Below, piece after piece: positions 18,074-20,745 of a DNA stretch of 64,000 nt (the first letter of the stretch is position 1; each line of letters begins with the position of its first letter). This stretch comes from Euprymna scolopes (lineage: Eukaryota), in NCBI GenBank assembly GCA_053919585.1, contig CM132787.1; one strand, 5' to 3'. The notes beneath the pieces were generated by a model. The model saw only the letters and a program-made list of their open reading frames with translations. It had not been told where the DNA came from and ran no database searches. The translations under genes were made by a program, and so were the position numbers.

Positions 18074-20666
18074 TAACGATAAGAATGGTATAGTAGCTAA
18101 CGATTAGTATGGTATAGTAGTTTACCATTAGAATGGTATAGTAGTTTACGATAAGTATGCTATAGTAGTTTACGATTAGTATGGTATAGTAGTTTAAGAT
18201 TAGAATGGTATAGTAGTTAACAATTAGGATGGTTAAGTAGTTAACGATTAGTATGGTATAGTAGTTTAAGATTAGGATGGTATAGTAGTTAACGTTTAGG
18301 ATGGTATTTTAGTTAACGTTAGGGATGGTATTTTAGTTAAGTAGTTAAAGATTAGTATGGTATAGTAGTTAACGATAAAGATGGTATAGTAGTTAACGAT
18401 TAAGATGGTATAGTAGTTAACGATTAGTATGGTATAGTGGTTAATGACACGGAAAGGCGACCTTAGGATGATATATTAGTTTACGATTAGGATGGTATAG
18501 TAGTTAACAATTAGGATGAAATGGTAGTTAACGATTAGTATGGTATAGTAGTCAACGATTAGGATGTTATAGTAGTTAACGATTAAGATGATATAGTAGT
18601 TAACGATTAAGATGATATAGTAGTTAACGATTAAGATGGTATAGTAGTTAACGATTAGGATAGTATAGTAGTTAACGATTAGGATGATATAGTAGTTTAC
18701 GAATAGGATGGTATAGTAATTAACCATTAGGATGATATTGTAGTTAACGATTAAGATGATATAGTAGTTAACGATTAAGATGATATAGTAGTTAACGATT
18801 AAGATGATATAGTAGTTAACGATTAGGATGATATAGTAGTTTACGAATAGGATGGTATAGTAATTAACCATTAGGATGATATAGTAGTTAACGATTAGGA
18901 TTGTATAGTAGTGAACGATTAGGGTGGTATAGTAGTTAATGATTATTATGGTGTAGTAGTTAACGATTAGGATTGTATAGTAGTTTACGATTAGGTGTGT
19001 ATAGTAGTTAACGATTATTATGGTATAGTAGTTAACGATTAGTATGGTATAGTAGTTAACGATTCGTATGTTATAGTAGTTAACTATTAGGATGTTATAG
19101 TAGTTAACGATTAGTATGGTATAGTGGTCTTTTTCTGAAAGTATATCTTTTAAACTCCTCGTCTAATGTTCACAGGAAACATGAGTTGGAACAATTACAT
19201 TGAGAGTATTGCCAGGACCGCTGCGAAAAAGGTAGATTCTGTCTACCATGCTAGAAAGCTACTAACGCCCGAAAATATCCTGTACCTTTATAAGGCCACC
19301 ATTCTCCCATGTATGAATATTGTTGTCATATTTGTGCTGATGCATCTGCTACTAGTCTCTCACTCCTAGACAAGGTTCAAAAGAGAGTCGCCAACCAAAT
19401 AGGCCCTGAACTGTCATCTAAGCTTTAGCCTCTATCCCATTGACAAAATGTTGCATTCCTCTGCCTATTCTACAAGTACTTTAACGGTGAATGCACTGAC
19501 GAACTGCAATCACTTGTACCCCCTCGACGTAAATACCCTCGACAAACCTGACAAGCAGCTCAATCCCCCTCCTTTACAGTAGAGATCCCTAGATGTAAGA
19601 GAGCCTTCTTACCCAGTAGTTTCTTCCTCATAACCGCTAGACTTTGGAATTCCCTTTCGGGTCCCTGCTTCCTCAGAAGTACTTATATGCAGAAGTTAAA
19701 GTAAAACGTGACGACATCTTGCTACCCAACTCCCTACATAGTACTCCTGTAGCTTATGTCACTGATAGTAGCCTCTTACATCAAAGTGGCAAAGTGCCTT
19801 GTTTAGGGTGAAAATAGAATAAAAAAGGATGGTATAGTGTTAACGATTAGGGTGGGATAGTGGTTAACGATAAGGATGGTATAGTGGTTAACAATTAGGA
19901 TGGTATAGTATTTAACGATTACGATGGTAGAGTATTTACCGATTAGGGTTGTATAGTAGTTAACGATTAGGATGGTATAGTGGTTAACGGTTAGTATGGT
20001 ATAGTGGTTAACGATTATGATGGCATAGTAGTTAACGATTAGGATGATATAGTAGGTTACGATTAAGATTATATGGTAGTTAACGATTAGGATGATATAG
20101 TAATTAACGATTAGGATGGAATAGTGGTTAACGATTAGGATGGTATAGTAATTAACCATTAGGATGATATAGTGGTTAACGATTAGGATGTTATAATGGA
20201 TAACGATTAGTATGGTGTAGTGTTAACGATTAGAGTTGTATAGTGGTTAACGATTAGGGTAGTATAGTTGTTAACGATTAGGATTGTATAGTGGTTAACG
20301 ATTAGGGTAGTATAGTTGTTAACGATTAGGATTGTATAGTGGTTAACGATTAGGATGATATAGTAGTTAATGATTAGGATGGTATTGTGTTTACCGATTA
20401 GGATGGTATAGTGAGTAATAATTAGGATAGCATAATTAATAGTTGGTTAACGATTAGGATGGTATAATATTTTTCCATTAGGATGGTATAATAGTTAACG
20501 ATTAGGATGGTATAGTGGTTAATGATTAGGATTGTATAGTAGTTAACGATTATTATGGTATAGTAGTTAACGATTAGGATGGTAAAGTGGTTAACGATTA
20601 GGATGGTATAATATTTTCCTATTAGGATGATAGAATAGTTAACGATTAGGATGGTATAGAAGTTAA
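18074..20666 (+). repeat. 24-bp minisatellite (about 80 units), consensus ttaggatggtatagtRgttaacga, split by a LINE fragment
   Basis: 24-nt periodicity directly visible; accounts for the IVNYYTIL repeat ORFs. Confidence 0.95.
19129..19826 (+). mobile_element. 5'-truncated CR1/L2-group LINE, same family as 36061-39060
   Basis: FTGNMSWNNYIESIARTAAKK..LYLYKATILPCM; 3' tail agtggcaaagtgccttgtttagggtg plus A-tract. Confidence 0.9.
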
Positions 20667-20745
20667 CGACACGGAAAGGCGACCTGCGTGTCCCAAGTTC
20701 AAATCCATTTCGTTCCACAAAAATCATTTCCACTGAAGATGTTGG
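20644..20745 (+). mobile_element. tRNA-derived SINE head terminating the 24-bp array
   Basis: Last repeat unit (A-box position) runs into a gacacg..cgtgtc hairpin and B-box GTTCAAATCC (20697); body matches the 17885 and 54538 fragments. Confidence 0.65.

What the first reader, a model, noticed from the sequence alone, without database searches (positions are those of the whole stretch)
18074..20745. Minisatellite built from a Pol III A-box: ~80 tandem tRNA-SINE heads feeding one B-box
Seen: the 24-bp unit contains TGGTATAGTRG. The last unit continues without a break into a gacacg/cgtgtc hairpin, a B-box (GTTCAAATCC, 20697) and a body shared with SINE fragments at 17885 and 54538. An internal unit at 18430-18463 reads 18 nt further into the same SINE (gacacggaaaggcgacct, identical to 20668-20685) before the repeat resumes. 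Established: TRGYNNAGTGG and GTTCRA are the tRNA-type internal promoter boxes bound by TFIIIC. Inference: the array grew by reiterating the SINE's 5' end (slippage or repeated RT template jumps). It could act as a TFIIIC-loading or insulator array, or give a ladder of Pol III start sites.
Basis: partly seen in the sequence, partly recalled or inferred. Interest (0 to 1): 0.75.

Follow-up and report, generated by a model that had tools for sequence, protein, structure and literature searches.

The report
Minisatellite grown from a SINE head
About 77 tandem copies of a 24-base piece of the front end of one old SINE copy have piled up in front of that copy, an ordinary transposon-derived minisatellite with no sign of a Pol III or insulator role.

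Summary
A 24-bp array of about 77 units lies at 18064-19126 and 19827-20670. Its last unit runs in register into a SINE copy (to about 20873) of a dispersed family. The unit matches positions 8-31 of the family's head, the A-box-like part.

It is flanked by an 11-bp target duplication, so the array is older than that insertion.

The internal long unit carries an 18-mer found only twice in the 5.9-Gb genome, both at this locus. It was therefore copied from this SINE copy. A 144-bp and a 48-bp block duplication inside the array point to DNA-level slippage or unequal exchange.

The exact 24-mer dimer occurs nowhere else. Other copies of the family show independent short duplications of the head (periods 18-32 bp, one of 21 bp x 17), the B-box (one array with more than 1,500 pattern matches) and the body. 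The A-box is therefore not special.

Only 6 of 77 units fit TRGYNNAGTGG, and there is a single B-box-like site. T4-T5 runs lie between most units and that site. The origin reading is supported; the TFIIIC, insulator or start-ladder reading is not. This is a new member of a known kind (SINE-derived tandem repeats). Earlier scan notes concern other repeats, not this array.

The parts
18064..19126 (+). 24-bp minisatellite, distal half (about 43 units; 35 of 42 carry AGTAG rather than AGTGG)
   Evidence: TRF; unit segmentation; 6-unit block duplication 18608-18751 / 18752-18895
18425..18463 (+). Long 39-nt unit that reads on through the SINE anticodon-like region (GACACGGAAAGGCGACCT) before the repeat resumes
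   Evidence: This 18-mer occurs only twice in the whole genome, both at this locus.
19116..19126 (+). Left copy of the 11-bp target-site duplication ATGGTATAGTG of the LINE insertion
   Evidence: read from the sequence
19127..19826 (+). 5'-truncated 3' end of a LINE (RT C-terminal coding remnant with stops, A-rich end) inserted into the array
   Evidence: BLASTN to other copies at 82-89% identity (window 36066-36765 minus strand, L016, L004, L028), which extend further 5'
19829..19839 (+). Right copy of the target-site duplication ATGGTATAGTG
19827..20670 (+). 24-bp minisatellite, proximal half (35 units; 11 AGTGG, 6 AGTAG, 18 other)
   Evidence: TRF; segmentation; 2-unit block duplication 20255 / 20303
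20647..20873 (+). The parent SINE copy from head position 8 to its degenerate (GAT/ATG)n tail; about 77-82% identical to other family members
20652..20662 (+). A-box-like site of the terminal unit (TGGTATAGAAG), degenerate against TRGCNNAGTGG
20668..20692 (+). gacacg / cgtgtc hairpin (anticodon-arm-like). It is present in the MFE fold, but the whole head has z = -1.4.
20696..20706 (+). The only B-box-like site (AGTTCAAATCC against GGTTCGANNCC)

Best explanation
This is a locus-specific, old and decaying minisatellite that grew out of one inserted copy of a dispersed SINE with tRNA-type promoter boxes.

A 24-nt segment of the SINE head (consensus positions about 7/8 to 30/31, the A-box / D-arm-like part) was first duplicated in place. 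It was then expanded to about 77 units by replication slippage and unequal exchange. The rest of that SINE copy (hairpin, B-box, body, tail) remains as an extended terminal unit. A LINE 3' fragment later inserted into the array and split it, and the two halves have drifted apart since.

The array most likely has no function: it is neutral repeat DNA.

Shown: homology to the head, continuity in register, uniqueness of the locus, the LINE insertion with its target duplication, and the block duplications.
Inferred: the slippage / unequal-exchange mechanism and neutrality.
For: - Array and units.
- Family: at least 1,935 first-look candidates. The alignment of 30 copies gives the head GGGAGGTGACGGTGGTCTAGTGGTTAACGACACGG.... 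The unit consensus matches positions 8-31 at 18/24, with an 18-nt core carrying 1-2 mismatches.
- The consensus 17-mer AGTGGTTAACGACACGG occurs 910 times and the 18-mer GACACGGACTGACGACCT 281 times, both with control 0.
- The private variant GACACGGAAAGGCGACCT occurs twice in 5.9 Gb, both at this locus. The long internal unit was therefore copied from this very copy.
- A dimer of the 24-mer with up to 2 mismatches gives 26 hits, all at this locus.
- Blocks matching at 23/24 or better per unit occur at a lag of 6 units (18608-18751 / 18752-18895) and at a lag of 2 units (20255 / 20303).
- The LINE fragment has an 11-bp target duplication and the repeat phase is preserved across it.
- Independent analogues exist in other copies: L077 has 21 bp x 17 running into the SINE head, with the SINE body further downstream. 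L076 has 32 bp x 2. Further head duplications have periods of 18, 21 and 29 bp. B-box and body duplications also occur.
- The same anatomy (array plus extended terminal unit reaching the SINE terminus) is described for SINE-derived satellites in squamates (PMC10702118).
Against: - No population or cross-species data were available, so neutrality and the timing of expansion are inferred.
- The first duplication step could have arisen during reverse transcription and would look the same today.
- Three other loci hold 24-bp arrays 69-76% similar to this one (L042, L045, L048). I take these as chance resemblance among AT-rich minisatellites. My rough estimate is about ten such arrays expected, but a distant relationship is not excluded.
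- The tRNA ancestry of the head is not detectable by ARAGORN or Rfam.
Confidence: 0.85

Rival explanations
1. The array was made at the moment of retroposition. The LINE reverse transcriptase reached the 5' end of the SINE RNA and jumped back repeatedly, so the head was reiterated in the cDNA.
For: The reiterated segment lies near the RNA 5' end. Several other copies show head duplications with different periods. The long unit and the terminal copy share the same private 18-mer, which a single RNA template would also explain.
Against: Multi-unit block duplications inside the array need DNA-level exchange after the units had diverged. B-box and body segments of the same SINE, which are not at the RNA 5' end, also form tandem duplications and one very large array. 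The units do not include the first 6-7 nt of the SINE. About 77 consecutive jumps would be unprecedented.
Confidence: 0.08
2. The array is functional. It acts as a TFIIIC-loading or insulator element, or as a set of alternative Pol III start sites feeding the single B-box.
For: The units descend from an A-box-bearing segment. The consensus SINE has tRNA-like A-to-B spacing, with box starts at about 13 and 57. A T4 run follows the SINE at 20888.
Against: Only 6 of 77 units fit TRGYNNAGTGG and none fits TRGCNNAGTGG. The unit nearest the B-box reads TGGTATAGAAG. There is one B-box-like site, with two departures from GGTTCGANNCC. T5 and T4 runs at 20470 and 20614 lie between all but the last two units and the B-box. 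Units are 81-85% identical pairwise with no sign of constraint. The parent copy is about 20% diverged from its relatives. By established knowledge, TFIIIC binding and ETC / insulator sites depend on the B-box.
Confidence: 0.04
3. The minisatellite was there first, and a 5'-truncated SINE landed beside it. The resemblance to the head is chance.
For: The genome is very rich in 20-40-bp AT-rich minisatellites. Weakly similar 24-bp arrays exist elsewhere. In L042 a SINE-like fragment did insert into such an array.
Against: The unit carries an 18-nt core matching the head with 1-2 mismatches and is continuous in register with the SINE. An internal unit 2.2 kb upstream carries the next 18 nt of this same copy, with its private substitutions.
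Confidence: 0.02

Closest known systems
SINE-derived satellites (sSats) of squamate reptiles (Vassetzky, Kosushkin & Ryskov 2023, PMC10702118)
   Same: Both are tandem repeats whose unit is a portion of a SINE, sometimes including head and promoter box, with a longer terminal unit continuing to the SINE terminus. Both show many independent primary duplications, of which few amplify.
   Different: Here the unit is only 24 bp (sSat units are 67-215 nt). It covers the A-box part only and occurs at a single locus without homogenisation. The host is, according to earlier scan notes, a mollusc and not a squamate.
Minisatellites / VNTRs expanded from mammalian SINEs (Alu-derived minisatellites, Jurka & Gentles 2006; mouse B1-derived VNTR, Bois et al. 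1998; Ahmed & Liang 2012), as listed in PMC9659126
   Same: Short internal SINE segments are expanded in place into locus-specific minisatellites.
   Different: Those SINEs have 7SL-derived heads and other segments are involved. None is reported as built from a tRNA-type A-box.
Pol III-related satellites from tRNA-related SINE regions (Xenopus satellite 1; Hydromantes Hy/Pol III), as listed in PMC9659126
   Same: Tandem DNA derived from the tRNA-related region of SINE-like elements.
   Different: By my own knowledge, those units are long enough to carry both A and B boxes and are multi-locus satellites. Here each unit holds at most an A-box remnant, and there is one B-box for the whole array.
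TFIIIC-only (ETC / COC) sites and tDNA insulators
   Same: The only link is that the array descends from a Pol III internal promoter.
   Different: Those sites are defined by B-boxes. This array has none within its units.

Membership tests
SINE-derived tandem repeat (sSat / TE-derived minisatellite) | The repeat unit is homologous to a portion of a dispersed SINE | tested here: met
   The unit matches family head positions 8-31 at 18/24, with an 18-nt core carrying 1-2 mismatches. The family is dispersed.
SINE-derived tandem repeat (sSat / TE-derived minisatellite) | The terminal unit is extended in register into the rest of the SINE, up to its terminus | tested here: met
   20647-20873 continues through the hairpin, B-box, body and (GAT)n-like tail.
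SINE-derived tandem repeat (sSat / TE-derived minisatellite) | Satellite behaviour: many loci with the same unit, and homogenisation | tested here: not met
   All 26 dimer matches are at this locus. Units are 81-85% identical pairwise. It is therefore a single-locus minisatellite and not a satellite family.
tRNA-derived SINE (type 2 Pol III promoter) | A-box and B-box at tRNA-like spacing in the family consensus | tested here: met
   TGGTCTAGTGG starts at about position 13 and AGTTCGAATCC at about 57, read from the alignment of 30 copies.
tRNA-derived SINE (type 2 Pol III promoter) | Recognisable tRNA cloverleaf or homology to a tRNA | tested here: not met
   ARAGORN finds no tRNA in the window or in 30 SINE loci. 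The Rfam tRNA model gives no hit at E up to 10. The fold of the head has z = -1.4.
tRNA-derived SINE (type 2 Pol III promoter) | High copy number, dispersed, with a simple-repeat tail | tested here: met
   At least 1,935 candidates; 910 exact copies of a head 17-mer; (ATG/GAT)n tails in the alignment.
TFIIIC-bound ETC / insulator array | A B-box (GGTTCGANNCC) in the repeated units | tested here: not met
   There is one B-box-like site in 17000-22000, at 20697, outside the array.
TFIIIC-bound ETC / insulator array | TFIIIC occupancy or boundary activity | not testable with these tools
Pol III-transcribed tandem satellite (Xenopus satellite 1 type) | Each unit carries a complete internal promoter (A and B boxes) | tested here: not met
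   The 24-bp units hold at most an A-box remnant, and 6 of 77 fit TRGYNNAGTGG.

The most novel reading that the evidence does not exclude
The SINE promoter-box arrays of this genome (this A-box-derived array and the much larger B-box-derived array on contig C39) are bound by TFIIIC and act as chromatin boundary or Pol III-loading elements. Minisatellite growth from SINE heads would then create new architectural sites.
Probability: 0.04. Interest if true: 0.7.

Novelty: new member of a known kind. Interest (0 to 1): 0.25.

Why it matters
The locus is a clean worked example of how a piece of a SINE becomes a minisatellite. The parent copy is still attached, and an internal unit with private variants proves in-place copying. 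A later LINE insertion dates the array as older than that event.

Together with the other head, B-box and body duplications of the same family, it suggests that the library-of-primary-duplications route to tandem DNA also operates in this invertebrate genome. That route has been described systematically only for squamate SINEs. This matters for repeat annotation. It does not reveal a new mechanism or function.

Tried and rejected
- tRNA detection: ARAGORN and Rfam on the window and on 30 SINE loci found nothing.
- A degenerate three-copy pattern (AGTRRTTAAY x 3) was uninformative: the reversed control gave more hits than the pattern. Later loci (the C39 B-box array, the 27-bp arrays and the other head duplications) could be seen only as matched strings, and I did not try to fetch them another way.
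- One script call gave no answer and was repeated.
- Full-text search for three SINE sequence strings found no paper.
- A candidate target duplication of the original SINE insertion (TGACTTTCAA at 18049 against TGATTTTCAA at 20885, one mismatch) is at chance level and was not used.
- The weakly similar 24-bp arrays L042, L045 and L048 were examined and judged unrelated or undecidable. In L042 a SINE-like fragment sits inside the array between GATGGTATATTAT repeats, which is the reverse of the situation here.
- The 131-aa minus-strand ORF at 18476-18871 is an artefact of the 24-bp (8-codon) periodicity.

Full report
**What is there**

Tandem Repeats Finder reports two blocks of one 24-bp repeat. 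They lie at 18074-19125 (43.9 copies, 80% matches, score 1131) and 19826-20669 (34.9 copies, score 977). A dynamic-programming segmentation gives 42 + 35 units.
- The majority consensus is TAGGATGGTATAGTAGTTAACGAT in both halves.
- Mean pairwise identity is 85% within the left half, 81% within the right half and 82% between them.
- The left half is dominated by the AGTAG variant (35 of 42 units). The right half, next to the SINE, holds 11 AGTGG, 6 AGTAG and 18 other units.
- Twenty-three units contain TGGTATAGTRG exactly.

The last unit (20647-20670) reads straight on into gacacggaaaggcgacctgcgtgtc, then AGTTCAAATCC at 20696/7, then about 170 nt of body ending in a degenerate GAT-type tail near 20873.

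**The array is interrupted**

Positions 19127-19826 are the 3' end of a LINE. They contain a broken reading frame of the kind found at the C-terminus of non-LTR reverse transcriptases (read by eye, from my own knowledge) and an A-rich end. They match other copies at 82-89% identity (window 36066-36765 on the minus strand, L016, L004, L028). Two of those copies, the one at window 36066-36765 and L016, continue further 5', so this copy is 5'-truncated.

The fragment is flanked by ATGGTATAGTG at 19116-19126 and at 19829-19839. With one copy of that duplication removed, the 24-bp phase runs on (a 23-nt unit). This is an ordinary target-primed insertion into an array that already existed.

**The parent element**

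The 191 bases from 20640 find at least 1,935 first-look candidates in the 5.9-Gb assembly. Forty were scored, at 76-82% identity, on many contigs. An alignment of 30 copies with flanks shows three things:
- A common 5' end, GGGAGGTGACGGTGGTCTAGTGGTTAACGACACGGACTGACGACCTGGGTGTCCCAAGTTCGAATCC...
- A conserved body.
- (ATG/GAT)n tails.

In this consensus the A-box-like TGGTCTAGTGG starts at about position 13 and the B-box-like AGTTCGAATCC at about 57, which is tRNA-like spacing. Exact-word counts confirm that normal copies carry this head. AGTGGTTAACGACACGG occurs 910 times and GACACGGACTGACGACCT 281 times, with no hit to the reversed controls.

A tRNA as such is not detectable. ARAGORN and the Rfam models give nothing in the window or in 30 SINE loci. 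The local head folds no better than shuffles (z = -1.4), although the gacacg/cgtgtc stem is in the minimum-energy fold. "tRNA-derived" therefore rests on the promoter boxes and their spacing only. Earlier scan notes call this genome mollusc or cephalopod-like; I did not test that.

**The unit comes from the head of this very copy**

In the register of the repeat, the unit consensus matches SINE positions 8-31 at 18/24. The core TGGTATAGTGGTTAACGA differs from TGGTCTAGTGGTTAACGA by one base. The internal long unit (18425-18463) keeps AGTGG and reads 18 nt further, GACACGGAAAGGCGACCT. This string differs from the family consensus at three positions. It occurs exactly twice in the whole genome: here and in the terminal SINE copy 2.2 kb downstream. 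That excludes a chance meeting of a SINE with an unrelated minisatellite, and it shows copying within the locus.

**How it grew**

Three observations favour DNA-level slippage or unequal exchange over repeated RT template jumps.
1. Blocks of already diverged units are duplicated inside the array. A six-unit (144-bp) block at 18608-18751 recurs at 18752-18895, and a two-unit block at 20255 recurs at 20303, each matching at 23/24 or better per unit.
2. Variants are clustered by half.
3. Tandem duplication is not confined to the RNA 5' end of this SINE.

Pattern searches over the genome found independent head duplications with different periods and registers:
- L077: 21 bp x 17 at 92% identity. 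It runs into the SINE head at 1669-1701, and the SINE body lies at 2170-2267.
- L076: 32 bp x 2.
- Three further cases with periods of 18, 21 and 29 bp.

The same searches also found duplications of other SINE parts:
- Body duplications.
- A 33-bp duplication from the anticodon region to the B-box.
- One very large array of 19/21-bp units made of the B-box plus the next eight bases. The pattern matched 1,529 times, and all of the first hundred listed except one on C25 lie at C39:2.054-2.059 Mb.

The A-box segment is thus one of several SINE parts that this genome has turned into tandem DNA. The first duplication could still have arisen during reverse transcription; I give that 8%.

**Uniqueness**

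A dimer of the 24-mer with up to two mismatches occurs 26 times, all at this locus. A BLAST-type search with 230 bases of the array finds three other 24-bp-period arrays at 69-76% identity (L042, L045, L048). They share only 11-13-nt stretches with this unit. None continues into a SINE head, and in L042 a SINE-like fragment lies inside the array between direct repeats.

Given the very large number of AT-rich minisatellites here, I estimate that about ten such resemblances are expected by chance. This is my own rough binomial estimate, not a tool result.

**Function**

- Only 6 of 77 units fit the relaxed A-box TRGYNNAGTGG and none fits TRGCNNAGTGG.
- The unit nearest the B-box reads TGGTATAGAAG.
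- There is a single B-box-like site, with two departures from GGTTCGANNCC.
- T5 and T4 runs at 20470 and 20614 (and at 18307 and 18331) would terminate Pol III coming from all but the last two units.
- By established knowledge of type 2 promoters, TFIIIC is anchored by the B-box and A-box contacts are weak and distance-dependent. TFIIIC-only sites and tDNA insulators are B-box sites.

An array of decayed A-box remnants is therefore a poor candidate for TFIIIC loading, for a boundary, or for a ladder of start sites.

**Comparison with what is known**

The anatomy matches the SINE-derived satellites of squamates: a tandem repeat with a longer terminal unit reaching the SINE terminus, and many primary duplications of which few amplify. 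The authors of that work left open whether such repeats exist outside squamates (PMC10702118). A review lists several further precedents (PMC9659126):
- Alu-derived minisatellites.
- A mouse VNTR derived from the B1 SINE.
- Satellites from tRNA-related SINE regions in Xenopus and Hydromantes.

This locus differs in three ways: the unit is very short (24 bp), it covers only the A-box part, and it occurs at a single locus. I file it as a new member of a known kind and consider it of low to moderate interest. The family could not be named. Three diagnostic strings occur in no held paper, and the Ceph-SINE motif quoted in PMC5786205 is not apparent in this SINE by eye.

**Limits**

After no further DNA could be cut from the genome, so the C39 array and several duplications are known only from matched strings.

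Noticed in passing
G000:C39:2053844-2059312 and beyond (not fetched): A very large minisatellite or satellite of 19/21-bp units, AAGTTCGAATCCAATTTCC / AAGTTCGAATCCAATT(T/C)CTCC. The unit is the B-box plus the next 8 nt of the same SINE family. The two-copy pattern matches 1,529 times on the forward strand (control 0). For TFIIIC binding this B-box array would be a far better candidate than the A-box array.
   Followed up: partly
L077:1329-1682 (G000:C20:112750161-112750514): A second head-derived array: 21 bp x 17 at 92% identity, unit TTAACACAGTGGTTAACGATG. It runs into the SINE head remainder at 1669-1701, and the SINE body lies 470 bp further on (2170-2267). A LINE fragment of the same family as window 19127-19826 abuts its 5' side.
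   Followed up: yes
G000:C4:141280079, C12:154074518, C19:104523700, C45:2184537 (not fetched): 27-bp arrays AGTGATTAACAAAGGACAGAATGAAAA at four or more loci. They possibly descend from the SINE head plus the anticodon region, or belong to another mobile element. Origin unresolved.
   Followed up: no
window 17885-17975 and 54533-54625, minus strand: Two mutually similar fragments with a B-box-like GTTCGAATCTCGG / GTTCAAATCTCGG. They are probably a different box-bearing SINE family. Their similarity to the SINE at 20647 is limited to the B-box region (alignment score 34-37 against a shuffle maximum of 40).
   Followed up: partly
L008:943-2225: Three copies of the SINE in the same orientation at about 535-bp spacing. 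This suggests a tandem triplication of a SINE-containing segment. The period is above the limit of the repeat finder.
   Followed up: no
L013 and L014 (G000:C9:149995929 and C9:149931801): Nearly identical SINE copies with identical flanks in opposite orientation, 64 kb apart. This looks like an inverted segmental duplication.
   Followed up: no
L010:2023-2106: An 84-nt perfect-hairpin element scoring 61 bits to Rfam mir-548 on both strands (below the gathering score of 90). It is most likely a palindromic MITE of the kind that gave rise to mir-548, not a microRNA gene.
   Followed up: no
window 28490-29946, 31314-31731, 35798-36059, 42446-45635: Large arrays of a 38-39-bp unit (up to 83 copies). 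One array abuts the LINE copy at 36066-36765. An earlier scan note derives this unit from LINE coding sequence. It would be another case of transposon-to-minisatellite conversion in the same window.
   Followed up: no
window 18476-18871, minus strand: A 131-aa ORF that exists only because the 24-bp unit (8 codons) lacks stops in one frame. It is not a gene.
   Followed up: yes
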